IMG/VR virus record: IMGVR_UViG_3300009545_000018
Location: 310,001-374,000 of that record
Length of the DNA: 64,000 nt
Direction: 5' to 3' (one strand)
Shown: positions 50,415 to 64,000 of the stretch, piece after piece
Layout of the letters: every line of letters begins with the position of its first letter
How positions within the stretch are numbered: position 1 is the first letter of the stretch
Notes under the pieces: generated by a model
What the model was told of the DNA's origin: nothing
The model's input: only the letters and a program-made list of their open reading frames with translations
Database searches by the model: none
Made by a program: the position numbers and the translations under genes

Positions 50415-53400
50415 ATGACTAAAAGAATCCCAGTATCTGGAACACAAAATATTTGGTTTGATACAGAACAAATAGACAATAATGATTTAAGTTTAGAACA
50501 AAATTATAATGATACTGTAACTTCTGGTATCATTAATAATCATATTGGAAGCGGCATATTATCTGAATCTTTAGAACAAAATACTATATTTGATTCTTTA
50601 TTAACTAATACTTTTTTAGATGGTATAGCTGTTAATCCACAAAATCAACCAACTGATAATAATTTTGGTAATCAATTAGAAATAACACTTACCAATTCAA
50701 AAGTTGCTTCAAAAAAGACTGTAAAAGTTGGTATAATAGGATTAGATTTTGAAGGAAATCTTCAATTTGAAACCTTTTATTTTAGAGTAAATGAAACACA
50801 AATAAGTAGAAAACATTTTGCCAGTATTTTAATACTTTTATTTAATGACTTTATAGGAGATCCTGATCTTTCTATGAACTTAGGTGGTAGAATTCTTATT
50901 AGAGAAGCTAAGCCTATGACTTTGTCAAGAGATCCTATAATGGTTGCTCAAGATGTAGAACCTAATTTGTTTTTTAGAGACTTTTTTCTTAATGGCTCTA
51001 TTTCCTTGCAAGCTTTATTACAGAATGCCTTACCAACATATAATATTGATTCTTTAAATATATTTACTGGAGAAAAAGATAATAAGGTATTATTAAATGG
51101 AGATGTTACTACACAAATAGGACAAAAATTTGTTGCAACAACTAATAATATTCAAAAAATCACTCTTTTATTATCAGTAAGAAACTTAGATTTAAATAAT
51201 GAAAATGATTTAGTATGGAATGGTGACTTGGTTGTTAGTGTTTATCCATTACAATCTGACATTGATTGCCCAAGTGATATTTCTCCAAGTTTACCAATTG
51301 ATTTTGCTCCATCTAATATTCCATTGGCACAACTTAGTGTGAATTATAATTCACTATTAGCTAATGGAATTGAACTTGGTTCTGTGCCACAGCCTGTAGA
51401 TTTTGTTTTTAGTAATAGTTTAGTTGCCACAGGAAATGTTCTTGTGCCAGGAAATTATTATGCCATAGCAGTTAAAAGATCTGGTTCGGCAAACAAATGT
51501 GATATTTTATTTTCTGTAGGTAGTGATAGGGTTCCAAACTCTAGAATTACTTCTTTTACTGGTGATCTATGGGTTGATATTCCAGAAGAAGATTTATGGT
51601 TTAAAATTTGGACCGACTCTGCCAAAGTATCTGATGGACAAGCATATGATACTGGTCATGGAATTACTATAACAAAAACTATTATTGATGAAGAATCGCA
51701 ATCAACTATTGATTATTGTTTTGATGATATTCAATTTGTTGGAAATGATGTATATAAAGCGGTTGTATCAGCCACTACATTAGAATCTGTACCAGTACCA
51801 GATCAAAGTACTGGAAATCCAGTTTTGAGTAGAAAACAATTTGTTCCAAAAGTTGACTTGTTAAATACTTTAGATATAGAAAATTTAGATGTAGCATCAG
51901 AGCCTTTATTAATTGGATCAATTTCTGATAAAAACAGAAAATTTTATGATTCTATTTCTGCTAACTTAAGTTCAATTTTATATTCTGCCACTATGGCAGA
52001 GGATGAACTATTGATTAAAGTAATTGATGACCCCACTGATGTTACAAGATACAATACTACTGTAACTGCATTAGTCACTAATTTAATAAATGGTGATTTT
52101 ATAGGAGCAAAAATTACTCCTAATGCCAATAATCCCTCAGTTTTTTATAGGGTAGCCAGCGCTCGTTTGTGTTCAATGATTGTTGGTGACGTTAATGGTG
52201 ACGGTATTATAGATAATGATGATTTAGATTTATTAAATTCTTATTTAGGATATAATCTAAATGTAGGTTTACCTTTACATGCCAGTGTAACGACTGATGG
52301 ATATACTACATCTTTTATAAATGGATATAAAACATATATTCAGCCATTTACTAATTTATTTTCTGTAAATTTTCAATTAATTGATCCAAATACTGGAGAC
52401 ATTGTTGCTGCTGGAATAGATGGTGTTTTAGTTGCAAATCCAACAGATCCAAGATTAGCTGAACTAACTAGTTCATCGGTAGATTTTAGTTCTATTGTTG
52501 GATTGAGTAGTTATAAATTAGTTATATTTGCTGGTGGTAATGACGCTGACCAGGGCGGATTTGATGTAACTTCTGTTGATACATTATCAAATGTAATTAC
52601 TATTAGAAAAGTAATTTTAAATGGAGATGTTTTATCTCAACTATTACGTGCGGACATTGATGGAGATTTTCATATTACATATACTGATGGTTATTTATTA
52701 CAAAGTTATATAAACAAACTTAGTTTAGATATGCCTCCACCAACTCCATATCCTGCTCCTACCAGTAATCCTTATGATAAAATTGGTACTAGATTTAATG
52801 TTTTAAGATTTAAATTAGAAAAATTTGTAGATAGAGATGATGATTATACTAATTTAAGTACTGGTCGAGCTGCTGGAATACATGTTCCTCAAGATATTTT
52901 TTCTGAGGATGGTTATTTTTCATCGCATGATTTTTATACTTCACCCGTACCAATATCATTTGATAAACAGCTTACTTGGAGTGAATCATTAATTGTAACT
53001 AACAGTAGGGCAAAATTAGTTCCAACTGTTTTTACTACACAAACTGGTTTTAGTCAAAATGACTGTGCTATAAAAGGCACTAGTTGTGAAATTTATCCTT
53101 CAATACCAGATTTTGATTCTGGTAGAGTAGATTATTTTGTTCCTAATAATTTAATTATTGGAGATGGCGGAGAACTTAAAAAACCGGATGGTAATTTTTA
53201 CAAGGTAGATTTTGAAGTAGGGACAGTAATACTTGAAATTCCTGATGGATTTTTTGGTTCAGAGAAAACTCTTAATATTATGGATGATTTTGTGGTAGAT
53301 TATACAGGAGACGGTGTAACACGTTTAGGTTTTCCTGCTATGAAATTTGCTGATTGTTCTTATGTTAACAATACGGCTTTGCTTAATGATCAGGTTAGAT

Positions 53401-54152
53401 TTTCTGTTTCAGTACAATCTTTTTCACCTAATATCAATGGTTTGAGTACAGACGGTTATGCCGGAATTATCGTGGATGGTAAAATTGGAGTGTCAGTAGA
53501 TTATACTACCGGATTAATCACATTAAATTTTAGCAATTTATTTCAAGATGAGATTCTTAAAACATTAAGCACCAAAATTCAAATACATGTTTATTTGAAA
53601 AAGGGTGGATTTAATAACTCTCCTCTTTTCATAAATTCTACTAAAGTACAAAATTTATTAAACTTAACCAATTCTTTTAGTGATGCAAACAGCACATCAG
53701 ATTCGGGTGATGCTGGTACTATTGGTATGGTTGTTGGTGGAGCTAGTGCAACCACCAGTATTAATAGTGGCGTTTATGTTCCATTATCAGGCACTTATAG
53801 TTATACTGGTGGAGATGTATTTACTTTAGGACCAAATTGTAAATTAACATATAATGGATTAATAGCAAGAGATTTTATTGTTACTTGCGTATTATCTTTA
53901 AATAAAGATGTATCTTCTGGGTTTGAGATAGATGGAAGTATATCTCTTAGTAATGATTATTTGGGAACTACATCTTCTCCTTGGTTTCAATCTGTAGATA
54001 CTACAGTTAATAAAAGAGCCAATTTAACATTTAATAGATATGTAACATTAACTCCAGGAGCTACAATTTCTCCCATTGTATATGTGCCTGGCGGAACAGT
54101 AAGTGGAAATATTGTTACATTAAATGTTACTATGACCGTTCAGTCTGCCTAA
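50415..54152 (+). CDS. Tail/baseplate-associated protein with dockerin-like Ca2+-binding repeats
   Basis: GDVNGDGIIDNDDLDLLNSYL and ADIDGDFHITYTDGYLLQSYI match dockerin EF-hand repeats; last gene of the baseplate block. Confidence 0.6.
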   Translation: MTKRIPVSGTQNIWFDTEQIDNNDLSLEQNYNDTVTSGIINNHIGSGILSESLEQNTIFDSLLTNTFLDGIAVNPQNQPTDNNFGNQLEITLTNSKVASKKTVKVGIIGLDFEGNLQFETFYFRVNETQISRKHFASILILLFNDFIGDPDLSMNLGGRILIREAKPMTLSRDPIMVAQDVEPNLFFRDFFLNGSISLQALLQNALPTYNIDSLNIFTGEKDNKVLLNGDVTTQIGQKFVATTNNIQKITLLLSVRNLDLNNENDLVWNGDLVVSVYPLQSDIDCPSDISPSLPIDFAPSNIPLAQLSVNYNSLLANGIELGSVPQPVDFVFSNSLVATGNVLVPGNYYAIAVKRSGSANKCDILFSVGSDRVPNSRITSFTGDLWVDIPEEDLWFKIWTDSAKVSDGQAYDTGHGITITKTIIDEESQSTIDYCFDDIQFVGNDVYKAVVSATTLESVPVPDQSTGNPVLSRKQFVPKVDLLNTLDIENLDVASEPLLIGSISDKNRKFYDSISANLSSILYSATMAEDELLIKVIDDPTDVTRYNTTVTALVTNLINGDFIGAKITPNANNPSVFYRVASARLCSMIVGDVNGDGIIDNDDLDLLNSYLGYNLNVGLPLHASVTTDGYTTSFINGYKTYIQPFTNLFSVNFQLIDPNTGDIVAAGIDGVLVANPTDPRLAELTSSSVDFSSIVGLSSYKLVIFAGGNDADQGGFDVTSVDTLSNVITIRKVILNGDVLSQLLRADIDGDFHITYTDGYLLQSYINKLSLDMPPPTPYPAPTSNPYDKIGTRFNVLRFKLEKFVDRDDDYTNLSTGRAAGIHVPQDIFSEDGYFSSHDFYTSPVPISFDKQLTWSESLIVTNSRAKLVPTVFTTQTGFSQNDCAIKGTSCEIYPSIPDFDSGRVDYFVPNNLIIGDGGELKKPDGNFYKVDFEVGTVILEIPDGFFGSEKTLNIMDDFVVDYTGDGVTRLGFPAMKFADCSYVNNTALLNDQVRFSVSVQSFSPNINGLSTDGYAGIIVDGKIGVSVDYTTGLITLNFSNLFQDEILKTLSTKIQIHVYLKKGGFNNSPLFINSTKVQNLLNLTNSFSDANSTSDSGDAGTIGMVVGGASATTSINSGVYVPLSGTYSYTGGDVFTLGPNCKLTYNGLIARDFIVTCVLSLNKDVSSGFEIDGSISLSNDYLGTTSSPWFQSVDTTVNKRANLTFNRYVTLTPGATISPIVYVPGGTVSGNIVTLNVTMTVQSA

Positions 54153-54206: not shown

Positions 54207-54986
54207 ATGAAAAAAAGAAATATTTTTATTATTTTGTTAGCGCTGTGTGGCTGTACACAAAATAAAAATTTAGATACTAAATTATCTATAACAACAATTC
54301 AAGAGCAGTTTATTGTTCCAACTTGTGCACCAGAAATGTTACACATTACTGGCACATATTGTACACAAGTTATTCAATTGTGTAAATCTTATATGGAGCC
54401 ACCCGAAACTACTCCCTTTGCCAGATGTTTAGAATTTAATAAAAGTAAATGCATTGGTAAAAATGTAGAAATGAATTTTTGTATAGATAAAGAAGAATAT
54501 TTCAATCCGATAGATCGCATTCCATTATCCAATGTATCTTGGACAATAGCAAAATCACTTTGTGAAAAACAGAACAAAAGATTATGTTCGGAGCCAGAAT
54601 GGAATTTTGCTTGTGAAGGAGAAGAAATATATCCATATACTACCGGCTATTCAAGACCATCCAAACAATGCAATATAGATACAGTGAAAGATATTATTTG
54701 CAATAATGGACTGTGTGATCATAGAAATTCAGTGGTTCAAAACCCTGAATGTTTGTCACCATTTGGTGTGCATAATATGTCTGGCAACGTTGACGAATGG
54801 GTTGAAGTTCCAAAATATCAACATAGTAAAATTCCAGATTTATGGATGAGATCATCTTTAAAAGGCGGGCATTGGTTACCAGTAAGAAATAGATGCCGCC
54901 CCAAAACAGATGATCATGATGAATCATTTCATCAAATTTCGGTAGGATTTAGATGCTGTAAGGATAGTGATGATTTACTTAAATAA
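54207..54986 (+). CDS. Lipoprotein with FGE-sulfatase (SUMF1 / C-type lectin fold) domain
   Basis: Signal peptide MKKRNIFIILLALCGC with lipobox; RLCSEPEWNFAC, SPFGVHNMSGNVDEWV and GFRCC motifs. Confidence 0.88.
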   Translation: MKKRNIFIILLALCGCTQNKNLDTKLSITTIQEQFIVPTCAPEMLHITGTYCTQVIQLCKSYMEPPETTPFARCLEFNKSKCIGKNVEMNFCIDKEEYFNPIDRIPLSNVSWTIAKSLCEKQNKRLCSEPEWNFACEGEEIYPYTTGYSRPSKQCNIDTVKDIICNNGLCDHRNSVVQNPECLSPFGVHNMSGNVDEWVEVPKYQHSKIPDLWMRSSLKGGHWLPVRNRCRPKTDDHDESFHQISVGFRCCKDSDDLLK

Positions 54987-55701
54987 AATATTTAAAATTC
55001 CCGGTCCTAAAGATTTAGGCATGTCTGATTCAAATAATGCAATGCCTATAGCTTGTTTTTCTAATGATGAGTCTGCTACATGGGAAGATTATTATGCTAA
55101 AGTAAAAAAAGAATATCCTATCAAATATTTTATAGCAGCAACCTTTATTGGATGCTTTGTATCTTTATTTCAAAGAAATAAAAGAAGAATTCAAGAATTT
55201 ATTTATTGGATTAAATGTAATTATTTTAATAAATATAAATACCACATGTTAGACTTACGACAAAGAAAAAATATTACTTATGTTAATAATGGCATTACTA
55301 AATCTATTAAAAATCCAGATTATTATCAATATGGATGGCTAGATGTAGATGATAGAATGTTATATGCAATATTCGGACTATTAAATAGCTTTGTTGAAAA
55401 TGAATTGAATACAATTAAAGTATCAGAAAATGACGTTCAAACAAATCCATTTCTTGCTAAACAAAAAGTTGCTCAGGATGAAATATTAAGTATTTATAAT
55501 TGGTGGAATAATGATCGTTTTGTTGAAATGGAAGAGATAAATAAACTTAGATATAAATGGTCCTCTTTATCAAAATTAAAAAGAATAAATGCCAAACAAC
55601 GAGCTTTGAATCAACTTATGATTAAAGAAAAAGAATTTGAAGATAAAACTGATGAAATGGTTGAAAAATTAATGAAAGTTAGACGTACCTTATGGTCGTG
55701 A
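54967..55701 (+). CDS. Hypothetical protein
   Basis: 244 aa ORF with coiled-coil C-terminus; start uncertain. Confidence 0.6.
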   Translation: MMIYLNKIFKIPGPKDLGMSDSNNAMPIACFSNDESATWEDYYAKVKKEYPIKYFIAATFIGCFVSLFQRNKRRIQEFIYWIKCNYFNKYKYHMLDLRQRKNITYVNNGITKSIKNPDYYQYGWLDVDDRMLYAIFGLLNSFVENELNTIKVSENDVQTNPFLAKQKVAQDEILSIYNWWNNDRFVEMEEINKLRYKWSSLSKLKRINAKQRALNQLMIKEKEFEDKTDEMVEKLMKVRRTLWS

Positions 55702-55714
55702 TATAGTATCATCT

Positions 55715-56854
55715 ATGAAAATATGTTGGTATGGTTTTTTAGCTAAGAATCACTCGTGGAGTATAGTTGCGCAAAACATTTCTAGGGAATTAATCCGTAA
55801 AGGACATCAAGTAGATTTGTTTTCAACCAATGGTATTAATCATTTTCCACAAGATTTGATTCCTAATTTAAAAGGATTTGTTGAAGAAAATACTGCATTA
55901 ACTCCCGATTCTTTTAAAGAATTAGTAGAAAATAAATTAGACAAAGAGTATGATATGCAGCTATCATATACTGCTTTGAAAAATTTCGGGCATCATTTTA
56001 TTCGTGGATCCAAAAATAGATTTGGAATTTGGAATTATGAAACAACAGTTATTCCATCTTCATTTATTAAATATTATAAGTGCGTAGATAAAGTTTTACC
56101 ATCCTCTCAATTTAGTAAGAAAATTTTTACTGATAATGGAATGCCTGAGTCAGCGCAAATAGTAATTCCACATGGCATTCATTTAGATAGATTTAATAAT
56201 TTGGGTAAATATCCAATTAAATCTGACAAAAAATACAAAATATTATGTAATATTGCTCAGCCTCATTTAAGAAAAAATATCCCAGGATTATTTAAGGCTT
56301 GGGGACAAGCCTTTACTAACAAGGATGATGTTTCATTAGTATTAAAAATTTCTAAAAAGGGTGCTAATGGTAAAAGTGACATTAACTTTGATGATATTTT
56401 TAGAAATTTTAAAAAACAATATAAAAATCACGCCGAAGTTAAAATAATTGATACTTTTATAGATGATATAGAGCCATTATATAATGCATGTGATGTAGTG
56501 ATGACTATGAGTTTAGCCGAATGCTATTGGTTACCAGGGCTTGAAAGTTTTGCAGCAAATAAAGTAACAGTGGCTCCTCGTTATGGTGGTCAACTGGACT
56601 ATATGAATAATGATAATTCTATTCTTATAGATGGTAAGGAGATTAAAGCCGATTATAGTATGCAATATTGGGAACCATCTCCATATGCAAAAGCCTTTGA
56701 ACCAAGTCCAGCTGATTGTGCAGCCAAATTACAAGATCTAATTAAGAATTATGATTCTTATCACGCTAAGTTCTCGCCTAAAATGAAAGAGGTGGCTCAA
56801 GAACATACGTGGTCCAAGGTTGCTGACCGCATTTTAGATTTATGTGAGGAATAA
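55715..56854 (+). CDS. Glycosyltransferase, GT-B fold (GT4-like)
   Basis: VIPHGIHL, PHLRKNIPGL, YNACDVVMTMSLAECYWLPGLESFA motifs of GT4 enzymes. Confidence 0.88.
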   Translation: MKICWYGFLAKNHSWSIVAQNISRELIRKGHQVDLFSTNGINHFPQDLIPNLKGFVEENTALTPDSFKELVENKLDKEYDMQLSYTALKNFGHHFIRGSKNRFGIWNYETTVIPSSFIKYYKCVDKVLPSSQFSKKIFTDNGMPESAQIVIPHGIHLDRFNNLGKYPIKSDKKYKILCNIAQPHLRKNIPGLFKAWGQAFTNKDDVSLVLKISKKGANGKSDINFDDIFRNFKKQYKNHAEVKIIDTFIDDIEPLYNACDVVMTMSLAECYWLPGLESFAANKVTVAPRYGGQLDYMNNDNSILIDGKEIKADYSMQYWEPSPYAKAFEPSPADCAAKLQDLIKNYDSYHAKFSPKMKEVAQEHTWSKVADRILDLCEE

Positions 56855-57576
56855 TGTTGTCTATAGTAATACCAGTGTTTAATAAATGGAACTTTACTGA
56901 AGCTTGTTTAAATGATTTGCGCAGTCTTCCGCATAATACACATGAAATTATTGTTGTAGATAACAATAGTACAGATGAAACTCAGCATAAATTATTAAAT
57001 TTATTTTGTACTGAATATGAAGAGATTCGATATCATAAAAACCCTGAGAACTTAGGTTTTGCCAAGGCTTGTAATATAGGTTATTCATTGTCCAAACACC
57101 CTAATGTTATGTTCTTAAATAATGATATAAGAGTTAAATCTAATAAAAATAATTGGACAGACAAGATAATTGAGAAATGTAGTGAGGGATTAGTAGGACC
57201 TACTATGGGACAATTAGACTCTCAATTAAAATTTATTAAAGAATCTAATTGTGTATTACCTGGCAATTCTTATTTATCAGGCTGGTGTATTGCTGGTTCT
57301 AAAGAAACATGGAATAAGTTAGAAATTCCAAGAAAAGCAACTCAACAATTTTCTAATGCCAATGTACCGCAAATATTCTCAGAAGAATATGGCTTAGCAT
57401 ATTTTGAAGATACGGATTTAGGATTTCGTGCACGAAAATTAGGAATTAAAACAAATGTAGTTGATATACCGGTTATACATTTTGGCAAACAAAGTAGTTC
57501 CCAGATTAATACTTATGCACTTTATTCTTATGCAAGATCTATTTTTGTAAAGAAATGGACAAATAAAGTGCCCTAA
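56854..57576 (+). CDS. Glycosyltransferase family 2
   Basis: LSIVIPVFN, IIVVDNNSTD, NLGFAKACNIG, FLNND, YFEDTDLGFR. Confidence 0.92.
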   Translation: MLSIVIPVFNKWNFTEACLNDLRSLPHNTHEIIVVDNNSTDETQHKLLNLFCTEYEEIRYHKNPENLGFAKACNIGYSLSKHPNVMFLNNDIRVKSNKNNWTDKIIEKCSEGLVGPTMGQLDSQLKFIKESNCVLPGNSYLSGWCIAGSKETWNKLEIPRKATQQFSNANVPQIFSEEYGLAYFEDTDLGFRARKLGIKTNVVDIPVIHFGKQSSSQINTYALYSYARSIFVKKWTNKVP

Positions 57577-57914
57577 TGGAAATTGTTTTTAATGCTGTAA
57601 CGTATAATTTAACAAATTGGAAATTTTCTTATGAGGGTAGCGGTGGACAACCAATTCCAACATCTGTTAGTCGTTCTGTAATAGATCTAAAAAATCCATA
57701 TCCAGTATTAAAAGATGAGATTGGATTTTTTATACCTTTAACTAGTCCTGATATTATTTATCAAGTTTATGGGCAAGGATCTTTAACAGATTTTGCAATG
57801 ATATATAGTCGTGCCTTTAATAATATTTCTTATAAGCAAAAAGATCTTAATAAAGCTATGATTCATTTAGATGATTTTTTATTAAAATTAACAAAATTTA
57901 GTTGTTATTTATAG
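57576..57914 (+). CDS. Hypothetical protein, KLKxF-tail array 2 (ends DDFLLKLTKFSCYL)
   Basis: TAATG coupling; N-terminal YNLTNW motif shared across the array. Confidence 0.7.
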   Translation: MEIVFNAVTYNLTNWKFSYEGSGGQPIPTSVSRSVIDLKNPYPVLKDEIGFFIPLTSPDIIYQVYGQGSLTDFAMIYSRAFNNISYKQKDLNKAMIHLDDFLLKLTKFSCYL

Positions 57915-57918
57915 AACG

Positions 57919-58257
57919 ATGAAATTAAAATTTAATAAACAAGAATTTGTACTTTCACACTGGAAAGTGATGAATAACTGTTATTGTAGAGTTTTATATG
58001 TCCCATCCTCTTGTTGTGATTTTATTATAAAACATCGGTCTGTTGGAGCGACTAATTTTTATATAAATAATCATTATATTTATATATCTGGATTAGATAT
58101 TTTAACAATTAGCGGCGAAGGTTATTTGTCAAAAATAGCATATCAGTTTAATAATATTTATAAAGATCGTAAATACAAAATAAAAGAATTAGAAATAGCC
58201 AAAATGGATGTTACTAATTTTATTTTAAAGTATACAAAACTATATTCATTTACATGA
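57919..58257 (+). CDS. Hypothetical protein, KLKxF-tail array 2 (ends NFILKYTKLYSFT)
   Basis: N-terminal FVLSHW motif; shared C-terminal helix. Confidence 0.7.
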   Translation: MKLKFNKQEFVLSHWKVMNNCYCRVLYVPSSCCDFIIKHRSVGATNFYINNHYIYISGLDILTISGEGYLSKIAYQFNNIYKDRKYKIKELEIAKMDVTNFILKYTKLYSFT

Positions 58258-58604
58258 TATTAACGGTAAAAACCAATAATCATACTTTTGTTTTCTCTAA
58301 ATGGATGAAATTCAGAACAAAACATGATTTTAAAAACTCTTATCCAGATTATATTAGATTGAGCGATGATTTTCCTTACTGGGATGTTGAAATAGGATTT
58401 AAATTAATTAGTTCAGAAATAGAGTGGCAACACAACCAGAGTACTGGCATTTGGGAAGCATTCTCTACTCCAGAATTTTACCATGTAATAAAGATTTATA
58501 AAAATCTTTATGGCAGTAAGGTATCATATGATGATATCGAAGCTGCTAAATCAAAAATGGATGAGTTATTAATTAAATATGATAAATTGGGGTGTTTTTT
58601 ATGA
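58254..58604 (+). CDS. Hypothetical protein, KLKxF-tail array 2 (ends DELLIKYDKLGCFL)
   Basis: ATGA overlap; N-terminal FVFSKW motif. Confidence 0.7.
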   Translation: MILTVKTNNHTFVFSKWMKFRTKHDFKNSYPDYIRLSDDFPYWDVEIGFKLISSEIEWQHNQSTGIWEAFSTPEFYHVIKIYKNLYGSKVSYDDIEAAKSKMDELLIKYDKLGCFL

Positions 58605-58918
58605 TTTTTTATTATAAAGAAAAAGAATATTGTTTAACAGATTGGACAATATCTCATCAAGGTTACCATTATTGGCGCAGGTTAGTTATGTCTGATGGAA
58701 AACCCTCCACTTATGATTTTATTGGTTATAGAATTTGGAAAGATAAAGAATATACTTTAGCATCTAGTGGTTTATTTGTAGAAATTCATAAGTTATATAT
58801 TATGTATGATAATACTGCTGGAAAACCTGTAAGAATTGATGATAACACCTTATATCCTTTTAAAGAAAAATTAGATGATTTCTTATTACGAGTTAATAAA
58901 CTAAAGGTGTTTATATGA
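58601..58918 (+). CDS. Hypothetical protein, KLKxF-tail array 2 (ends DDFLLRVNKLKVFI)
   Basis: Start taken at the ATGA overlap; N-terminal YCLTDW motif. Confidence 0.7.
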   Translation: MIFYYKEKEYCLTDWTISHQGYHYWRRLVMSDGKPSTYDFIGYRIWKDKEYTLASSGLFVEIHKLYIMYDNTAGKPVRIDDNTLYPFKEKLDDFLLRVNKLKVFI

Positions 58919-59220
58919 GTATAATCATTGCAAATATAACAATTGGTGATTGGGAAGGCTTTGGTTCAGATGGTTATATTTGGAATTTTTGGAGATTCTC
59001 TTCTGGTAGTTTAGGAATTGGTTTATTAGTTGATAATTCAGATTGGTTTAAATTACAGCCCAATACCGCTACTTGGTCATTGATTTTTCATTCACCATTA
59101 TATTTTTTACAAGATCACTTTAAAGATATTGACTTCGTGAAATATTCAGAATTAGAGTTAACAAAAAAAGAAATAGATTTAAGGCTTGATAAAATTTCAA
59201 AACTTAAAAGTTTTTTATGA
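58915..59220 (+). CDS. Hypothetical protein, KLKxF-tail array 2 (ends RLDKISKLKSFL)
   Basis: ATGA overlap; N-terminal ITIGDW motif. Confidence 0.7.
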   Translation: MSIIIANITIGDWEGFGSDGYIWNFWRFSSGSLGIGLLVDNSDWFKLQPNTATWSLIFHSPLYFLQDHFKDIDFVKYSELELTKKEIDLRLDKISKLKSFL

Positions 59221-59270
59221 ATTTTTAATTCAAGCCATTGACAATTAAATTAATAAAATTAAGCTAACAC

Positions 59271-59313
59271 AATTATCAAGACATAGAATACAATCTAACT
59301 GATTGGGAAGTCC
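59271..59313 (+). pseudogene. Truncated 5' fragment of a further array-2 member
   Basis: Frame reads NYQDIEYNLTDWEV, matching YNLTNW / EYCLTDW of array 2, and stops being family-like exactly at the LAGLIDADG stop codon (59314). Confidence 0.5.
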
Positions 59314-60033
59314 TTAATCTTTAAATTTGAATACATGATTTTCACAATATAACTTATATATATTATGTTTTCTGTCTAAATAAATATTTGCATCTTTATA
59401 AAGCCATTCACAAAAACGTTTGACTTGGCGACTTCCTCCAAAACACAATTTATATGTATTGTTTTTATATCTTTCTGGGTGATATATTTGCCCCCTAATA
59501 TTTAAATTTGATAAAATATTGTTTATTGAAATACACATTTCTTGTGTTGAAGCAAATTCAATATTTAATTGATCTTGATGTATATAGATACTCCCATCAC
59601 CATCAAAATATCCTCTAATAAAATGTTGAATCAAATGATTATCAATCCATTCTGGAAATGTAATATTAAAACTTTTAGCGCCATGACGCCCCTTTTTTAT
59701 TAATGATGTAGACAAATATCTACTGTTTAATTCAAGTCTATATGCAACGTATTTACCTTTATTTTTTAGTTGTTTAAATGGCGGGCGTGGTTTGCCAAAA
59801 AAATTTGCACATTTAACTAAATGATTTTGATCCATTTCTTGTAATTCTATAATAATTTGTCCGGTTTTTTCCTTATTATAAGCATCTGCATAAAAGAAAC
59901 CCAACCAATATGCTTTTTCTTCACAATTAATTTCGTCCATTAAATTTTCTGTTATAATATATTTTCTCACTATAGGATATAAAATTATGCCCAAGATACC
60001 TGAAGTTAAAATAAATTTTGTAGGAGGTCCCAT
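59314..60033 (-). CDS. Free-standing LAGLIDADG homing endonuclease (true start probably the GTG at 59970 or nearby)
   Basis: EEKAYWLGFFYADAY and HFIRGYFDGDGSI motifs, IYLDRK tail; oriented opposite to its neighbours. Confidence 0.9.
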   Translation of the reverse strand: MGPPTKFILTSGILGIILYPIVRKYIITENLMDEINCEEKAYWLGFFYADAYNKEKTGQIIIELQEMDQNHLVKCANFFGKPRPPFKQLKNKGKYVAYRLELNSRYLSTSLIKKGRHGAKSFNITFPEWIDNHLIQHFIRGYFDGDGSIYIHQDQLNIEFASTQEMCISINNILSNLNIRGQIYHPERYKNNTYKLCFGGSRQVKRFCEWLYKDANIYLDRKHNIYKLYCENHVFKFKD

Positions 60034-60869
60034 TGCCGGAAGGAGTTGAGCTAAGAATCAGTAAAGATTTGTTACAACCATTGGTTGTTAATAAGGTTGT
60101 AATGCAAGCCAATACTTGTCTTAAAGGCAGATATGCTTATGATAAAAGTGGTTTAGGTAAATTAAATCAATTAATATCTGAATTACCTTTAACAGTTTCT
60201 GAGGTGAATGTTAAAGGTAAATTTATGTATTGGGTATTTTCCAAAGATGATATAACTTTATTTTATATGTTTTCCACTTTTGGCATGACTGGTCAATGGA
60301 GTTATATTGAAGGTAAACATCCCTGTTTTGAATTTCAATTTTCGGATGGTTCTAAAATATTTTTTAATGATCCGCGCCATTTTGGAACTATTAAGTTTAC
60401 AAATAATAAGCAAGATTTACAAAATAAATTAAATGATTTGGGCTGGGATCCCTTTACTCCATTTAAAGATAATAAAAATTTTATAATAAATGCTCTTAAA
60501 TATAGTAATAAAACTATTAGTGAAGATTTGATGAATCAGAAATTATTTTGTGGTGTTGGCAATTACATACGGGCTGAGGCTTTATATGATTGTAAAATAT
60601 CTCCTTGGTGTTTAAGTAAACATTTAACTGAAGATAATATAATTAAATTATGCGAATCTATTATAAAAGTTATGGAGGAGTCATATAAGCATCAGGGCGC
60701 TACCATTAGCACTTATAAAGACGCTTATGGTGCTGAAGGAAAATATACTAGTTGTTTTAAGGTTTATGGTAAAAAGATTGATACTAATGGTTATAATATT
60801 ATAAAAGAAAAGAGTGGTGACGGTAGGACTATTCATTGGTGCCCCGACATACAAAAAATTGGGAGTTAA
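60033..60869 (+). CDS. mutM: Fpg/Nei family DNA glycosylase-AP lyase
   Basis: TTG start with AGGAGG RBS; PE N-terminus, KGKFMY, FGMTGQW, NDPRHFG, H2TH motif LMNQKLFCGVGNYIRAE, GRTIHWCP finger. Confidence 0.92.
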   Translation: MPEGVELRISKDLLQPLVVNKVVMQANTCLKGRYAYDKSGLGKLNQLISELPLTVSEVNVKGKFMYWVFSKDDITLFYMFSTFGMTGQWSYIEGKHPCFEFQFSDGSKIFFNDPRHFGTIKFTNNKQDLQNKLNDLGWDPFTPFKDNKNFIINALKYSNKTISEDLMNQKLFCGVGNYIRAEALYDCKISPWCLSKHLTEDNIIKLCESIIKVMEESYKHQGATISTYKDAYGAEGKYTSCFKVYGKKIDTNGYNIIKEKSGDGRTIHWCPDIQKIGS

Positions 60870-60870
60870 T

Positions 60871-61866
60871 ATGACTACTTTTCAAAAAATATTGCTTACT
60901 TTAGGAGTAGTTATTGCTCTTTTATTAGGATTTGTTATTTATCAGCAAAAACAAAATTCTGATCAACAAAATGCTATTGAAAAGCAAGTGGTTTTACAAA
61001 AAGAGTTAAATGATAAAATAGTAAGGGCTCAAGCAGAATATGCCACTAAAAATGATTTAGAAAATTTTATTAAAACAAACGGCATAGATTTAAAAGTAAT
61101 TCAAAATGATTTAGATAAATTATCTGCCGATTTAACTAGTACAAACAAAGTAGTTGTAAATAGTAATGGAGTAAAATCTGATCATGTAGAAAGTACTAGC
61201 TCAGAAATTAAGAACCCTAATCCAACCTTACCTACCTGTAAGGATGGTACAATTTGTCCTAATGCTGACCCATTTGGGTATTTGTCCAAACAACAAAACC
61301 TTAAATTAAATGAGCCTTTTGGAGATACTAATGTTCCAATAGGTGAAGTAGGCTTTAGTGCTTGGCAGGATAAACCATGGAATCTTAATATTTCTCCTCG
61401 TGAATATGATTTAATTACTGTAGTTGGTGAGGATGAAAATCAAAGACAATATTTTTACAACAAATTTAAAGTAAAAGTAGATGGTAAAGAGTATGATGTT
61501 AAGATTAACACATCACAATCTAAACAAGAATATCCAACAGCCAAATTTAGTTTTTGGAACCCACGTCTATTTTTAGGCATTGATAGTGGATTAAATATTC
61601 AAAGTTTTAGGGGAGAATTCGCCCCCACTCTTAATTTACAAATTATGTCATATGGGCAATTTAAGAGTCAGCCTGATTTTTCTATTTTACAAGCTGGCAT
61701 TGGTTATGGTATAGTTAGTAAAAAAATACAATTTGTATTAACTCCAGTTGCTTATAATATCGGTAAACATTTGCCGTTAATAAACAATTTATATGTAGGA
61801 CCATCTATCATGGTTAATACTCAAGGAGATATATCGATTATGGGAGCTATTAGAGTAGGATTATAA
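60871..61866 (+). CDS. Membrane-anchored coiled-coil protein with C-terminal beta-strand array (spanin-like)
   Basis: GGAG RBS before ATG at 60871; N-terminal TM helix (ILLTLGVVIALLLGFVIY), coiled coil, then amphipathic beta-strands (LQAGIGYG...IMGAIRVGL). Confidence 0.45.
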   Translation: MTTFQKILLTLGVVIALLLGFVIYQQKQNSDQQNAIEKQVVLQKELNDKIVRAQAEYATKNDLENFIKTNGIDLKVIQNDLDKLSADLTSTNKVVVNSNGVKSDHVESTSSEIKNPNPTLPTCKDGTICPNADPFGYLSKQQNLKLNEPFGDTNVPIGEVGFSAWQDKPWNLNISPREYDLITVVGEDENQRQYFYNKFKVKVDGKEYDVKINTSQSKQEYPTAKFSFWNPRLFLGIDSGLNIQSFRGEFAPTLNLQIMSYGQFKSQPDFSILQAGIGYGIVSKKIQFVLTPVAYNIGKHLPLINNLYVGPSIMVNTQGDISIMGAIRVGL

Positions 61867-62699
61867 TGCATATTAATGTTTTTACGCTTAATTGGAATGG
61901 AAAAGATAAGTTACAAACTTTATACCCAACTTTAATTAATTCATTATCAGATTTGAATTATACATGGTTTGTAAAAGATAATGGTTCTAAAGATGATTCT
62001 GTTAGTTATTTAAATTCATTAAATGATGACAAGATAAAATGTATTGCTTATAAAAATAATTTGCAAAATTTTGCAACTGGTATGAACTATTTGTTTGCTG
62101 AAGCTGCTCCGAATGATGAAGACTTAATAGTGTTACTTAATAATGATGTTATTTTTAATGATAGTAATTCATTAAAATACATGATGTCAATCATTAATAA
62201 TGATCCAAATGTTGGTGTAGTGGGCGCCCGTCTGTTATATACTGGTACAAAAAAAATACAACATGCTGGAGTAGTAATTGATAATAAGCATAAGATGCCA
62301 ATGCATTATCGAGCACATCAGGAAATAGATAAAGATTCTGAAAAGAATAGAGAATTTCAGTCCGTAACAGCTGCAGTTGTATTAACTAAAGCTAAATATT
62401 TTAAAAACATATGTACTACTAATAAGTCTGGAATTAATGGAATGGATGAAAACTTTCATTGGGCATTTGAAGATGTCTCTATGTGTTTATCTATCAAATA
62501 TAATATGAATAAGAAAATTGTATATTGTGGTAATACTAATATTTATCATGAGGAAAGCGCTTCATTAAAAAAAGTACCATCGAATAAATTGTTTATGCCA
62601 CATAACACCAATTATTTTCTTAAATTATGGGCTGATAGATATACTTTAGATCATGATGCTTATAAGAATAATAGTAAGTATCAATTGTATGAGAAATAA
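61866..62699 (+). CDS. Glycosyltransferase family 2
   Basis: VKDNGSKD, LLNNDV, VGARLLY...IQHAG, VTAAVVL, FEDVSMCL. Confidence 0.92.
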   Translation: MHINVFTLNWNGKDKLQTLYPTLINSLSDLNYTWFVKDNGSKDDSVSYLNSLNDDKIKCIAYKNNLQNFATGMNYLFAEAAPNDEDLIVLLNNDVIFNDSNSLKYMMSIINNDPNVGVVGARLLYTGTKKIQHAGVVIDNKHKMPMHYRAHQEIDKDSEKNREFQSVTAAVVLTKAKYFKNICTTNKSGINGMDENFHWAFEDVSMCLSIKYNMNKKIVYCGNTNIYHEESASLKKVPSNKLFMPHNTNYFLKLWADRYTLDHDAYKNNSKYQLYEK

Positions 62700-62702
62700 A
62701 AT

Positions 62703-63665
62703 ATGAAGAAGAAATTACTAGTTACTGGAAGTTGTGGATTTATTTTTGGTAATTTTATCAGAAAAGTAATTTATAATTATAAAGAAAAATATGATGTAGT
62801 TAGCGTTGATAAGGTACAAAATAATGCTATCAATTCTATTTATAATAATAAAAATCATGTGTTTCATATCGCTGATATTACCGATCAACATGTTATGGAT
62901 GTTATCTTTCAATTTGAAAGACCAGATATTGTAATTCATGGCGCCGCAGAGAGTCACGTTGATACTTCATTAAAAACCCCTAATGCTTTTGTGAATTCTA
63001 ATGTATTAGGAACGCAAAATATTATTAATTCTTGCGTTAAACATAATGTAGAAAAATTAATTTATATATCAACTGATGAGGTATATGGATCTTTAACATC
63101 GGAAAATGATGTAGCTTGGGATGAAACTGCTCCCCTAAACCCTAAAAACCCTTATGCCGCCACTAAAGCTGCCGGAGAACTCTTAGTAAAAGCCGCTCAC
63201 CAAGCTCATGGGTTAATTTATAATATTACCAGAAGCTCTAATAACTATGGACCCCGCCAATTCCCCGAAAAGCTTATCCCAAAGGCGATAAAATGCATTT
63301 TGGAAAATAAAAAAATACCTATTTATGGTCAGGGATTACAAATTAGAGATTGGACCCACGTCTTTGATAATTGTCAAGCTTTAATAAATATTTTAGAGAA
63401 TGGTAAAGATAATGAGGTTTATAATATTTCTGCTAATCAAGAGTTTACCAATATTGAAGTGATACAAAAAATTTGTAATACTTTAAATAAAGGACATGAG
63501 TTAGTCGAATTTATTAAAGACCCTCGTGGAAACTCTCATGATTTTAGATATTCTGTTAACTCAAGTAAATTAAGAAGTCTAGGGTGGAAACCATCTTACA
63601 AATTTAAGGATGGAATTGTTGATACCATCGAATGGTATACCACCAATAGTTGGTTTTTAAAATGA
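62703..63665 (+). CDS. rfbB: dTDP-glucose 4,6-dehydratase
   Basis: LLVTGSCGFI, HGAAESHVD, YISTDEVYG, PYAATKA (YxxxK), SNNYGPRQFPEKLIP, IRDWTHV, RYSVN. Confidence 0.93.
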   Translation: MKKKLLVTGSCGFIFGNFIRKVIYNYKEKYDVVSVDKVQNNAINSIYNNKNHVFHIADITDQHVMDVIFQFERPDIVIHGAAESHVDTSLKTPNAFVNSNVLGTQNIINSCVKHNVEKLIYISTDEVYGSLTSENDVAWDETAPLNPKNPYAATKAAGELLVKAAHQAHGLIYNITRSSNNYGPRQFPEKLIPKAIKCILENKKIPIYGQGLQIRDWTHVFDNCQALINILENGKDNEVYNISANQEFTNIEVIQKICNTLNKGHELVEFIKDPRGNSHDFRYSVNSSKLRSLGWKPSYKFKDGIVDTIEWYTTNSWFLK

Positions 63666-63868
63666 CTTTATCAGAAGCTGCTTCTGCATTAAATATACAA
63701 TATAAAAATTTATTTACATCTAATTATCATAATACTATGATGGTTGGTATTGATGAATTTAATATAATAGTTTATCTGAATAATAAAAATAATATAAATG
63801 AACTACCGACCGAGTTTGAAGGCTATCCAGTGGATATAAAAGTTATCGGTGAAATTGTTCCAGCGTAA
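63662..63868 (+). CDS. Small hypothetical protein
   Basis: ATGA overlap with rfbB; 68 aa ending LPTEFEGYPVDIKVIGEIVPA. Confidence 0.6.
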   Translation: MTLSEAASALNIQYKNLFTSNYHNTMMVGIDEFNIIVYLNNKNNINELPTEFEGYPVDIKVIGEIVPA

Positions 63869-63879
63869 TGGAGAAAAGT

Positions 63880-64000
63880 ATGTCAGCTACATCAATAACA
63901 GAAGAAGACAAAAAAGAAGAAATTGTAGATAATATTTCAAATGAAGAAGCTGTTGATATGAACAAGTTAGCAGCTCTCAAAGCAAAAAATCAAGCCAAAC
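63880..64000 (+). CDS. Hypothetical protein, 3' truncated by the window end
   Basis: GGAG RBS; open frame MSATSITEEDKKEEIVDNISNEEAVDMNKLAALKAKNQAK to the end of the window. Confidence 0.6.
   Translation, partial: MSATSITEEDKKEEIVDNISNEEAVDMNKLAALKAKNQAK

What the first reader, a model, noticed from the sequence alone, without database searches (positions are those of the whole stretch)
55715..63665. Phage glycosylation locus: GT4, two GT2 and an RmlB-type dehydratase next to the virion genes
Three glycosyltransferases plus the enzyme making dTDP-4-keto-6-deoxyglucose suggest the phage builds its own 6-deoxysugar glycan. Possible targets are virion proteins (capsid and tail glycosylation is known in some actinophages), the host surface (receptor masking) or DNA; a DNA glycosylase lies within the locus. 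The RmlB nucleotide-binding loop is atypical (GSCGFIF instead of GxxGFIG).
Basis: partly seen in the sequence, partly recalled or inferred. Interest (0 to 1): 0.6.

Follow-up and report, generated by a model that had tools for sequence, protein, structure and literature searches.

The report
Megaphage rhamnose glycan module beside tail fibres
A 448-kb uncultured soil phage carries, at the end of its tail-fibre genes, a conserved set of three sugar-transferring enzymes, a membrane protein and a sugar dehydratase; with two genes elsewhere in the genome these give it its own route to L-rhamnose, and what gets decorated is still unknown.

Summary
Window 55715-63665 encodes a GT-B (GT4-like) transferase, two GT2 transferases, an Fpg/Nei DNA glycosylase and a dTDP-glucose 4,6-dehydratase (RmlB). 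The RmlB cofactor loop reads GSCGFIF.

The window lies in a 447,763-bp phage record. Its locus sits at the far end of a contractile-tail module: sheath, baseplate J, then 2376-aa and 1245-aa giants.

New points:
- **Accessory genes.** Fpg, a LAGLIDADG endonuclease and five small tandem ORFs are dispensable.
- **Rest of the pathway.** About 157 kb upstream lie an RmlA-type thymidylyltransferase and a reductase. The reductase matches plant and mimivirus bifunctional 3,5-epimerase/4-reductases far better than bacterial RmlD. That explains the missing RmlC and points to NDP-L-rhamnose.
- **DNA as target is unlikely.** The only ThyA homologue is canonical, and no TET/JBP or C5-methylase was found.

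Target: I favour a phage-encoded acceptor such as the tail fibres (about 0.45). Host-surface remodelling is the main rival (about 0.3).

Novelty: a new variant of a known kind. Interest is moderate.

The parts
55715..56854 (+). GT-B fold glycosyltransferase (GT4-like, probably retaining); core gene 1
   Evidence: phrog_2170 E 2.6e-27. PDB profile hit 7mi0 E 1.4e-8. Invariant E269-x7-E277. Pfam GT4/GT1 hits just below their cut-offs. 63-69% identical in 14 loci.
56854..57576 (+). GT2 (GT-A) glycosyltransferase 'GT2a', no TM segment; core gene 2. Its start overlaps the GT4 stop.
   Evidence: PF00535 72.9 bits. Invariant DNxSxD, NND and EDTD motifs. Present in all 15 related loci.
57576..59220 (+). 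Five tandem small ORFs (101-116 aa) sharing a C-terminal K..(L/M)D.(F/L)L.K..KL..F(L/I) motif. Insertion unique to this genome, not part of the module.
   Evidence: No family hits. No homologue in the 14 loci. Shared motif seen in the translations.
59314..60033 (-). LAGLIDADG homing endonuclease (mobile element)
   Evidence: PF14528 46.4 bits. Six paralogues elsewhere in the genome. Same slot in L016/L017.
60033..60869 (+). Fpg/Nei-family DNA glycosylase with a TTG start. Long-standing but dispensable resident of the locus.
   Evidence: H2TH 55.6 bits, Fapy_DNA_glyco 42.2 bits. TIGR00577 144.6 bits, below the 203.3 cut-off. Pro2-Glu3 present, only two Cys in the C-terminal part. Present in 8 of 14 loci and in L041.
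60871..61866 (+). u331: conserved unknown protein. N-terminal TM helix, helical stalk, S/T/P/N-rich NPNP linker with paired Cys, beta-rich domain, C-terminal small beta-barrel. Core gene 3.
   Evidence: In all 15 loci. 679 unannotated homologues. AF2 pLDDT 73.8 and 82.4. C-terminus Z 9.5 to a designed barrel, Z about 5 to OmpA/OprF/OmpW-type barrels. Cys are present as 2 or 0.
61866..62699 (+). GT2 (GT-A) glycosyltransferase 'GT2b', no TM segment; core gene 4. Its start overlaps the u331 stop.
   Evidence: PF00535 36.9 bits, PF13712 26.3 bits. Invariant DNxSxD and NND. No solved relative by profile.
62703..63665 (+). RmlB-type NDP-glucose 4,6-dehydratase with loop GSCGFIF; core gene 5
   Evidence: TIGR01181 354.4 bits. 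Ten best solved matches named (d)TDP-glucose 4,6-dehydratases. TDE and YxxxK present. F/M at the third-Gly position across the clade.
54207..54986 (+). Variable neighbour: predicted lipoprotein with an FGE-sulfatase (GldK/PorK-like) domain
   Evidence: PF03781 68.8 bits. TIGR03525 GldK weak. N-terminal lipobox-like LALCGC. Found only in L023 among relatives.
54967..55701 (+). Variable neighbour u244, unknown, with one hydrophobic segment
   Evidence: 34-41% identical in 10 of 14 loci. No family. Sequence.
50415..54152 (+). 1245-aa giant, probable fibre/receptor-binding protein with a variable C-terminal 100-150 aa
   Evidence: Relatives align only to residues 1 to about 1090-1148. It follows the baseplate genes.
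43277..50407 (+). 2376-aa giant with a ConA-like lectin domain, probable baseplate/fibre protein
   Evidence: PF13385 34.3 bits. Conserved upstream of the module in all loci that reach it.
39177..43277 (+). Baseplate wedge (gp6/J-like) protein
   Evidence: PF04865 82.9 bits. phrog_6 E 2.2e-32.
63868..64000 (+). Start of a TubZ/PhuZ-like tubulin gene, which bounds the module downstream
   Evidence: PF00091 and PF22453 on G000 373868-375226. A 451-458-aa ORF follows RmlB, directly or after one to three short ORFs, in all 12 loci that reach that far; its homology to the tubulin gene was not tested.

Best explanation
The locus is the transferase half of a phage-encoded L-rhamnose glycan system.

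Shown:
- Five genes (GT-B transferase, GT2a, the membrane/beta-barrel protein u331, GT2b, RmlB) form a tightly packed, same-strand block.
- A whole clade of roughly 380-490-kb phages keeps this block directly after the baseplate and giant fibre genes.
- The genome also encodes an RmlA-type glucose-1-phosphate thymidylyltransferase, and next to it a UGER/NRS-ER-type bifunctional 3,5-epimerase/4-reductase. These lie at G000 214735-216313, outside the window.

Inferred pathway: glucose-1-P -> (d)TDP/UDP-glucose (RmlA-like) -> NDP-4-keto-6-deoxyglucose (RmlB) -> NDP-L-rhamnose (epimerase-reductase). No RmlC is needed. The three soluble transferases then build a short rhamnose-containing glycan in the cytoplasm.

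Inferred target (weakest step): a phage-encoded acceptor, most likely the giant tail-fibre/baseplate proteins encoded just upstream. This would parallel mimivirus fibrils, chlorovirus capsids and mycobacteriophage capsid/tail glycans. Fpg, the homing endonuclease and the five small ORFs are passengers.
For: **Enzyme identities:**

**Conserved order** in 14 loci at 63-69% GT4 identity and in a distant locus at 34-48%.

**Start/stop overlaps:** 56854, 57576, 61866.

**Pathway completion:**
- RmlA-like: the 21 best solved matches are named glucose-1-phosphate thymidylyltransferases, best 183.5 bits.
- Reductase P0137: 135 bits to Arabidopsis NRS/ER 4QQR and 110 bits to mimivirus L780 7JID, against at most 46 bits to any bacterial RmlD.
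- P0137 keeps the GCIF Cys and the Lys that align with L780 Cys108/Lys175 (residues per PMC9614988).
- L780 accepts dTDP as well as UDP substrates (PMC9614988).
- No RmlC, no DegT aminotransferase, and only these two extended SDRs in the genome.
- The RmlA-ER pair is conserved in the relatives G001 and G002.

**Why a phage-encoded acceptor:**
- The transferase set is constant and more conserved (GT4 63-69%) than the neighbouring fibre genes. The fibre tip, u244 and the FGE protein vary.
- Homing endonucleases and an intein inside RmlB (L021) target the locus, as they typically do conserved phage genes.
- The genome has no priming phosphoglycosyl transferase and no protein with more than six predicted TM segments, such as Wzx, Wzy, WaaL or GT-C enzymes have.
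Against: - No glycan, acceptor or expression data exist. No RNA run holds the locus.
- Soluble GT2 and GT4 enzymes of this size are also the standard builders of O-antigen and capsule units on host lipid carriers. Their solubility therefore does not discriminate.
- Neighbours carry envelope signals: the FGE-domain lipoprotein, and u331 with a TM helix, a probable disulfide and an OMP-like barrel. This fits a cell-surface role.
- Iyer et al. 2021 (PMC7824862) read comparable jumbo-phage clusters as host polysaccharide modification.
- The fibre proteins show no obvious Ser/Thr-rich glycosylation tracts.
- RmlB falls just below the NCBIfam equivalog cut-off and has an unusual cofactor loop.
- The RmlB homologue in L041 has YxxxM instead of YxxxK.
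Confidence: 0.45

Rival explanations
1. Host-surface remodelling. The three transferases add rhamnose-containing residues to the host's own lipid-linked O-antigen, capsule or cell-wall glycan units. Host flippase, polymerase and ligase export them. This masks the receptor against superinfection or stops progeny sticking to debris. u331 and the FGE lipoprotein act in the envelope in the same programme.
For: - GT2/GT4 sizes and lack of TM segments fit O-unit transferases.
- GT2a hits EPS/teichuronic/rhamnosyl-transferase models weakly and phrog_841 'GtrB-like O-antigen conversion'.
- Envelope-targeted neighbours.
- Two single-EamA small membrane proteins elsewhere in the genome, of the size of lipid-linked-sugar flippase subunits.
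- Published reading of jumbo-phage sugar clusters (PMC7824862).
Against: - The transferase content is invariant across phages about 35-60% diverged whose receptor-binding tips differ. Host glycans would be expected to differ between their hosts.
- No priming transferase, Wzx, Wzy, WaaL, GtrA or GT-C is encoded.
- The locus is core and intein/HE-targeted, not sporadic like a moron.
Confidence: 0.3
2. u331 itself is the acceptor or a partner. The transferases glycosylate its S/T/P/N-rich NPNP linker before export, as cytoplasmic transferases do for some autotransporter adhesins. Alternatively the module builds an envelope-spanning glycoconjugate together with it.
For: - u331 lies between GT2a and GT2b in all 15 loci, with its stop overlapping the GT2b start.
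- Disordered linker rich in S/T/P/N with an invariant NPxP.
- Glycoprotein genes are often clustered with their dedicated transferases (general knowledge).
Against: - The linker is replaced by a charged stretch in L041 while the transferases stay.
- Topology is ambiguous.
- The fold matches are weak apart from a designed barrel.
Confidence: 0.1
3. DNA glycosylation. The transferases decorate modified bases in phage DNA, and Fpg is functionally linked to them.
For: A DNA glycosylase sits in the locus in 8 of 14 relatives and in the distant L041. Phage GT-A and GT-B enzymes do glycosylate DNA elsewhere (10.1101/2023.12.21.572611; PMC13326640).
Against: - The only ThyA-family gene scores 329 bits to PF00303, and its listed solved matches are named thymidylate synthases or DHFR-TS fusions, apart from a few unnamed or mislabelled entries.
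- No C5 DNA methylase, with a working control.
- No TET/JBP, though that control was silent.
- Fpg is absent from 6 of 14 relatives that keep every transferase.
- No known DNA glycan uses dTDP-6-deoxyhexoses (my knowledge).
Confidence: 0.03
4. No joint function. The genes are unrelated auxiliary genes that merely share an operon end.
For: The function of u331 is unknown. The other pathway genes lie 157 kb away.
Against: Fifteen loci spanning deep divergence keep the same five genes in the same order, while everything between them turns over. A sugar-nucleotide enzyme next to three transferases is a coherent biochemical unit.
Confidence: 0.05

Closest known systems
Mimivirus fibril glycosylation (R141 UGD in the glycosylation cluster, L780 UGER elsewhere, plus cluster transferases)
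   Same: - The virus encodes its own 4,6-dehydratase and a single bifunctional epimerase-reductase for L-rhamnose.
- The dehydratase sits with the transferases and the epimerase-reductase lies elsewhere in the genome (PMC9614988).
- P0137 scores 110 bits to L780.
   Different: - The host is a bacterium.
- The dehydratase here is nearer bacterial/archaeal RmlB (256 bits) than R141 (173 bits).
- It is paired with an RmlA-type thymidylyltransferase, so the pathway is a mosaic.
- The acceptor is unknown.
Bacterial rml pathway (RmlA-RmlB-RmlC-RmlD) with O-antigen/CPS transferases
   Same: RmlA-like and RmlB-like enzymes, and soluble GT2/GT4 transferases.
   Different: - No RmlC.
- The reductase is of the UGER type, not RmlD.
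- No priming transferase, flippase, polymerase or ligase.
- The genes are split between two loci.
Jumbo-phage (cyanophage) sugar/glycosyltransferase clusters described by Iyer et al. 2021 (PMC7824862)
   Same: NAD-dependent epimerase/dehydratase, nucleotidyltransferase and several transferases in a large phage genome.
   Different: Those clusters are sporadic and polymorphic and often include cupin isomerases. This module is invariant, attached to the tail-fibre genes, and contains a conserved membrane/beta-barrel protein.
Mycobacteriophage virion glycosylation (Freeman et al. 2023, as cited in PMC12619734)
   Same: Phage-encoded GT2-type transferases, with a methyltransferase in some relatives (L019), possibly acting on virion proteins.
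   Different: - There is no sequence relationship beyond the superfamily.
- Those phages use host sugar nucleotides.
- Those glycans sit on capsid and tail-tube C-termini, which was not examined here.

Membership tests
dTDP-glucose 4,6-dehydratase (RmlB, extended SDR) | Score at or above the NCBIfam TIGR01181 equivalog cut-off | tested here: not met
   354.4 bits against a cut-off of 365.1. A narrow miss, and the next family (GalE) scores only 138.6.
dTDP-glucose 4,6-dehydratase (RmlB, extended SDR) | Catalytic Thr-Asp-Glu and Tyr-x-x-x-Lys | tested here: met
   STDEVYG and YAATK are in the translation and align with 2hun.
dTDP-glucose 4,6-dehydratase (RmlB, extended SDR) | Rossmann motif G-x-x-G-x-x-G | tested here: not met
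   GSCGFIF: the third Gly is Phe. It is F or M in all 12 clade members and in L041. A conserved variant, not damage.
dTDP-glucose 4,6-dehydratase (RmlB, extended SDR) | Closest solved relatives are RmlB enzymes | tested here: met
   The ten best solved matches are named (d)TDP-glucose 4,6-dehydratases, 173-256 bits.
UGER / NRS-ER bifunctional NDP-4-keto-6-deoxyglucose 3,5-epimerase/4-reductase (P0137, outside the window) | Closer to characterised UGERs than to RmlD | tested here: met
   4QQR 135.2 bits and 7JID 110.1 bits, against a best RmlD of 46.1 bits. JGI labels several homologues '3,5-epimerase/4-reductase'.
UGER / NRS-ER bifunctional NDP-4-keto-6-deoxyglucose 3,5-epimerase/4-reductase (P0137, outside the window) | Epimerisation acid/base pair (L780 Cys108, Lys175) plus YxxxK | tested here: met
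   GSGCIF Cys, NLLNK Lys and YSKTK align with the L780/NRS-ER residues (residue roles from PMC9614988).
UGER / NRS-ER bifunctional NDP-4-keto-6-deoxyglucose 3,5-epimerase/4-reductase (P0137, outside the window) | Makes NDP-L-rhamnose in vitro | not testable with these tools
   Needs an enzyme assay.
Glucose-1-phosphate thymidylyltransferase (RmlA; P0138, outside the window) | Family score and closest solved relatives | tested here: inconclusive
   The 21 best solved matches are named G1P thymidylyltransferases, best 183.5 bits. NCBIfam scores are below the equivalog cut-offs: 180.5 of 320 and 157 of 361. Nucleotide specificity is not shown.
GT2 (GT-A fold, inverting) | PF00535 above the gathering score, and conserved DxD-type motifs | tested here: met
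   72.9 and 36.9 bits against a cut-off of 23.3. Invariant DNxSxD and NND in both families.
GT4 (GT-B fold, retaining) | Pfam GT4/GT1 above the gathering score | tested here: not met
   26.9 of 28.5, 25.0 of 26.4 and 23.0 of 27. It just reaches 26.4 'with its neighbours in the frame'.
GT4 (GT-B fold, retaining) | E-x7-E motif and GT-B homology | tested here: met
   E269 and E277 are invariant and kept in L041. 7mi0 E 1.4e-8. phrog_2170 E 2.6e-27. CAZy family membership itself is inferred.
Fpg/Nei DNA glycosylase | Both Pfam domains, N-terminal Pro-Glu, four-Cys zinc finger | tested here: inconclusive
   Domains are above their cut-offs and Pro2-Glu3 are present. Only two Cys lie in the C-terminal part, so it may be a zincless finger. 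TIGR00577 scores 144.6, below 203.3.
Phage DNA-glycosylation systems | An enzyme that makes the acceptor base (hm/ho-pyrimidine synthase, or C5-methylase plus TET) | tested here: not met
   The TET control did not ring, so that single absence is weak.
Seroconversion / O-antigen modification cassettes (Gtr-type or Wzy-type) | Polytopic flippase, GT-C or polymerase, or a priming transferase | tested here: not met
   A hydropathy scan of all 695 ORFs of 80 aa or more found none with more than six predicted TM segments. The small TM proteins are not GtrA. No Bac_transf.
Virion glycosylation systems | Glycan found on structural proteins | not testable with these tools
   Needs virions. There is no cultured relative.

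The most novel reading that the evidence does not exclude
A widespread clade of 380-490-kb soil and freshwater megaphages glycosylates its own giant tail fibres with L-rhamnose. It would do so through a self-contained mosaic pathway: bacterial-type RmlA and RmlB plus the epimerase-reductase otherwise known from plants, fungi and mimivirus. u331 would be a new membrane/beta-barrel component of the process. This would be a bacteriophage counterpart of giant-virus fibril glycosylation, and the first phage use of the UGER route.
Probability: 0.3. Interest if true: 0.7.

Novelty: new variant of a known kind. Interest (0 to 1): 0.5.

Why it matters
Virus-encoded glycosylation that does not rely on host sugar nucleotides is well documented in giant eukaryotic viruses. 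In phages it is known mainly as scattered clusters of uncertain purpose.

Here a large uncultured megaphage clade keeps one fixed module at the end of its tail-fibre genes. It completes the rhamnose route with a single epimerase-reductase of the type so far tied to eukaryotes and mimivirus (10.1101/854612).

If the fibres are the target, several things follow:
- It bears on how huge phages recognise hosts and evade binding or immune factors.
- It offers three compact transferases and a two-enzyme keto-sugar-to-rhamnose step for glycoengineering.
- It gives a testable role to u331, a protein family of about 680 members with no annotation.

If the host surface is the target instead, the module is an unusually conserved exclusion system.

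Tried and rejected
- **DNA similarity to GenBank phages:** only a 40-bp chance hit.
- **GT4 in GenBank phages:** distant (21-25%) Streptomyces and Microcystis phage transferases only. The Kenrey neighbourhood gave no clue to a target.
- **u331:**
  - no Pfam or PHROG family;
  - no hit in GenBank phages even at E 1;
  - none in 185,579 species genomes;
  - Foldseek against PDB gave nothing at E 0.001 or better;
  - BFVD gave one uncharacterised homologue and weak hits to a Cellulophaga 'structural protein' and phage OMP-barrel proteins;
  - the ESM Atlas gave only viral hypotheticals and DUF6549 at 0.87.
- **GT2b profile:** no solved relative.
- **Promoter/terminator scan:** fewer promoter-like sites than in shuffles, so uninformative.
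- **RNA evidence:** the only public run holding the locus is the source DNA sample.
- **Fibre proteins:** no strong Ser/Thr tracts.
- **Fpg as a recent insertion:** rejected, because the distant L041 has it in the same slot.
- **Rejected readings:** a second genetic code (all ORFs are open under table 11), and a missing RmlC as evidence of an incomplete pathway.
- **Not used:** the large representative-protein search and the complex predictor. No claim here rests on absence of relatives or on a specific binding pair.

Full report
**Setting.** The window is bases 310001-374000 of a 447,763-bp IMG/VR virus record, rated complete by CheckV. GC is about 29%. The only public run that holds the locus is a rhizosphere metagenome, probably the source sample. 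Its separate assembly covers 56500-62400 in one 89,748-bp contig with no differences. All genes read open under table 11.

**What is at 55715-63665.**
- 55715-56854 is a GT-B fold transferase. Its Pfam GT4/GT1 hits fall just under the gathering scores. It matches phrog_2170 'glycosyltransferase' over its full length (E 2.6e-27). Its family profile finds the GT-B structure 7mi0 (E 1.4e-8). The E-x7-E pair is invariant.
- 56854-57576 and 61866-62699 are GT2 enzymes (72.9 and 36.9 bits). Both keep invariant DNxSxD and NND motifs and have no membrane segment.
- 60033-60869 is an Fpg/Nei glycosylase. Pro2-Glu3 are present, but only two Cys lie in the C-terminal part.
- 62703-63665 is an RmlB-type dehydratase. 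TIGR01181 scores 354.4 against 365.1. Its ten best solved matches are named (d)TDP-glucose 4,6-dehydratases. TDE and YxxxK are present.

The odd loop is real. GSCGFIF aligns without gaps to GGMGFIG. F or M at that position is shared by all twelve clade sequences and by a distant relative. It is therefore a fixed feature under selection, not decay.

- A LAGLIDADG homing endonuclease lies on the minus strand at 59314-60033. It has six paralogues in the genome.
- Five tandem ORFs of 101-116 aa lie at 57576-59220. They share a C-terminal motif and occur in no relative.
- A conserved 331-aa ORF, u331, lies at 60871-61866. Its likely ATG is two bases after the Fpg stop.

**Context.** Upstream the window carries a contractile-tail module in the usual order:
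- sheath at 17681-20479 and a weak tape-measure-like hit at 23587-25740;
- baseplate J/gp6 at 39177-43277;
- a 2376-aa protein with a ConA-like lectin domain, then a 1245-aa protein.

Downstream, a TubZ/PhuZ-like tubulin gene begins at 63868, followed by helicases and a DnaB-family helicase. The locus is thus the last block of the tail operon.

**Comparative evidence.** Fourteen IMG/VR loci, on contigs up to 480,838 bp, carry the GT4 homologue at 63-69% identity. All of them keep the same order:
- the two giants;
- optionally u244 or the FGE-sulfatase protein;
- GT4 and GT2a;
- a variable slot;
- u331, GT2b and RmlB; L019's contig ends inside GT2b, so its RmlB is not seen.

A 451-458-aa ORF follows RmlB, directly or after one to three short ORFs, in the 12 loci that reach that far. 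I take it for the tubulin gene on position and length only.

The variable slot holds Fpg in 8 of 14 loci. It also holds LAGLIDADG, GIY-YIG or DUF4379 endonucleases, and in L019 a methyltransferase. In L021 the RmlB gene carries an intein inside the AAESHVD motif.

A much more distant phage contig keeps the same order, including Fpg, at 28-48% identity. It is 383,427 bp and is binned with a Chitinophagales MAG.

The core genes are at least as conserved as the fibre genes. GT4 is 63-69% identical and RmlB 56-73%. The 1245-aa protein is 58-66% identical, and only over its first 1090-1148 residues. u244 is only 34-41% identical.

**The rest of the pathway.**
- An RmlA-type gene lies at G000 214735-215466. 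Its 21 best solved matches are named glucose-1-phosphate thymidylyltransferases.
- No RmlC was found.
- Directly after the RmlA-type gene lies a 270-aa reductase, P0137.

P0137 is not an ordinary RmlD. It scores 135 bits to the Arabidopsis 3,5-epimerase/4-reductase 4QQR and 110 bits to the mimivirus UDP-L-rhamnose synthase L780 (7JID). No bacterial RmlD scores above 46 bits. It keeps the Cys and Lys that L780 uses for epimerisation (PMC9614988).

L780 accepts dTDP as well as UDP substrates (PMC9614988). The genome has no sugar aminotransferase and no other extended SDR.

The simplest reading is a three-enzyme route from glucose-1-P to NDP-L-rhamnose. The RmlA-ER pair is conserved in two relatives. 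P0137 has 922 homologues, on contigs up to 462 kb, and several are labelled '3,5-epimerase/4-reductase' by JGI.

A survey preprint reports this 'udp-type' enzyme only in eukaryotes and mimivirus, and the rml route in bacteria, archaea and phages (10.1101/854612). The mosaic seen here is therefore unusual. As in mimivirus, the dehydratase sits with the transferases and the epimerase-reductase lies elsewhere.

**u331.** It has 679 homologues, none annotated. It has no match in GenBank phages or in species-representative genomes.

The models (pLDDT 73.8 for the whole protein, 82.4 for residues 84-331) show five parts:
- an N-terminal TM helix;
- a helical stalk;
- a disordered S/T/P/N-rich linker with an invariant NPxP;
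- a beta-rich domain;
- a roughly 100-residue C-terminal barrel.

The barrel matches a designed barrel at Z 9.5. It matches eight-stranded outer-membrane barrels only at Z about 5, which is no more than a common arrangement.

The linker has either two Cys (10 of 13 sequences) or none (3 of 13), which suggests a disulfide and an extracytoplasmic location. I cannot assign it a function. It may be an envelope protein of the infected cell, a virion component, or the acceptor.

**Target.**

DNA is unlikely. The single ThyA homologue is a canonical thymidylate synthase. No C5-methylase or TET/JBP (control silent) was found. Fpg is dispensable.

Between virion and host surface the evidence is indirect. 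For a phage-encoded acceptor:
- the transferase set is invariant while the receptor-binding end varies;
- the module is a core part of the tail operon;
- selfish elements target it, as they do conserved phage genes;
- the genome lacks every lipid-carrier step: no Bac_transf, and no protein with more than six predicted TM segments.

For the host surface:
- these are the usual enzyme types for O-unit assembly;
- the neighbours carry envelope signals, namely the FGE-domain protein with a lipobox-like N-terminus and u331;
- two single-EamA membrane proteins lie elsewhere in the genome;
- Iyer et al. read similar clusters this way (PMC7824862).

I put the phage-acceptor (virion) reading at about 0.45, host remodelling at 0.3, u331-centred variants at 0.1, DNA at 0.03 and no joint function at 0.05.

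**Comparison and novelty.** Sugar-nucleotide plus transferase clusters in large phages are known, and so is virus-autonomous rhamnose synthesis in mimivirus. Three things are new here:
- a fixed five-gene module welded to the tail-fibre genes across a large megaphage clade;
- a conserved unknown membrane/beta-barrel member of that module;
- a mosaic rhamnose route using a UGER-type enzyme in a bacteriophage.

I rate it a new variant of a known kind, with interest 0.5.

**Limits.**
- There is no expression, glycan or host data.
- Nucleotide specificity (dTDP or UDP) is not settled.
- The CAZy family of the GT-B enzyme is inferred.
- The Chitinophagales link rests on one MAG bin.
- Read laying was kept to 5901 letters.

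Noticed in passing
L021:15397-17385 (IMGVR_UViG_3300005826_000037): The RmlB homologue is 662 aa because an intein of about 340 aa sits inside the conserved AAESHVD motif (Ser1 ... His-Asn | Thr+1). The Pfam Intein_splicing hit is weak, 25.2 bits. Inteins in sugar-nucleotide enzymes are unusual.
   Followed up: partly
window 57576-59220: Five tandem ORFs of 101-116 aa share a C-terminal K..(L/M)D.(F/L)L.K..KL..F(L/I) motif. They match no family and are absent from all related loci. This is a genome-specific expansion of a small gene family inserted into the module.
   Followed up: partly
window 54207-54986: An FGE-sulfatase-domain protein (GldK/PorK-like) with a lipoprotein-type N-terminus (…LALCGC) lies directly after the putative receptor-binding protein. 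This is the position of superinfection-exclusion lipoproteins in T5-like phages. It is present in only one relative (L023).
   Followed up: partly
G000 203495-208407 (L007:3495-8407): A second glycan-type locus: a GT92-like transferase, a beta-phosphoglucomutase-like HAD fused to a sugar-1-P nucleotidyltransferase, a methyltransferase fused to DUF7796, and a lone DUF7796 protein. A further GT2 (372 aa) lies at G000 393998-395116 on the minus strand.
   Followed up: partly
G000 62109-62516 and 130065-130538 (L034:109-516, L035:65-538): Two small single-EamA-domain membrane proteins (135 and 157 aa, 4-5 TM). They are the size of the ArnE/ArnF-type lipid-linked-sugar flippase subunits. They could matter for the host-surface reading.
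   Followed up: no
G000 214200-214718, 208980-209765, 373868-375226: The phage encodes translation initiation factor IF3, a Thg1-like tRNA-His guanylyltransferase and a TubZ/PhuZ-like tubulin. IF3 sits directly upstream of the RmlA-ER pair, also in relative G001.
   Followed up: no
L041:13395-14348 (contig JAIXLO010000160.1, 383,427 bp, binned as Chitinophagales MAG): A distant megaphage contig with the same module. Its RmlB homologue reads SDE and YxxxM in place of TDE and YxxxK, so it may be inactive or altered. Its u331 lacks the NPNP/Cys linker. The bin is a weak hint at a Bacteroidota host.
   Followed up: partly
window 59314-60033 (-) and G000 123384-313314 (six places): Seven LAGLIDADG endonuclease genes in one genome (28-41% identical). 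Relatives carry GIY-YIG and DUF4379 endonucleases in the same intergenic slots of the module.
   Followed up: partly
window 60033-60869: The Fpg/Nei homologue starts at TTG and keeps Pro2-Glu3. It has only two Cys where the zinc finger should be, so it may be a zincless-finger Nei like those of eukaryotes and mimivirus.
   Followed up: no
window 26635-27378: An endonuclease VII / HNH-like gene sits inside the tail module, another mobile-element-type gene among the structural genes.
   Followed up: no
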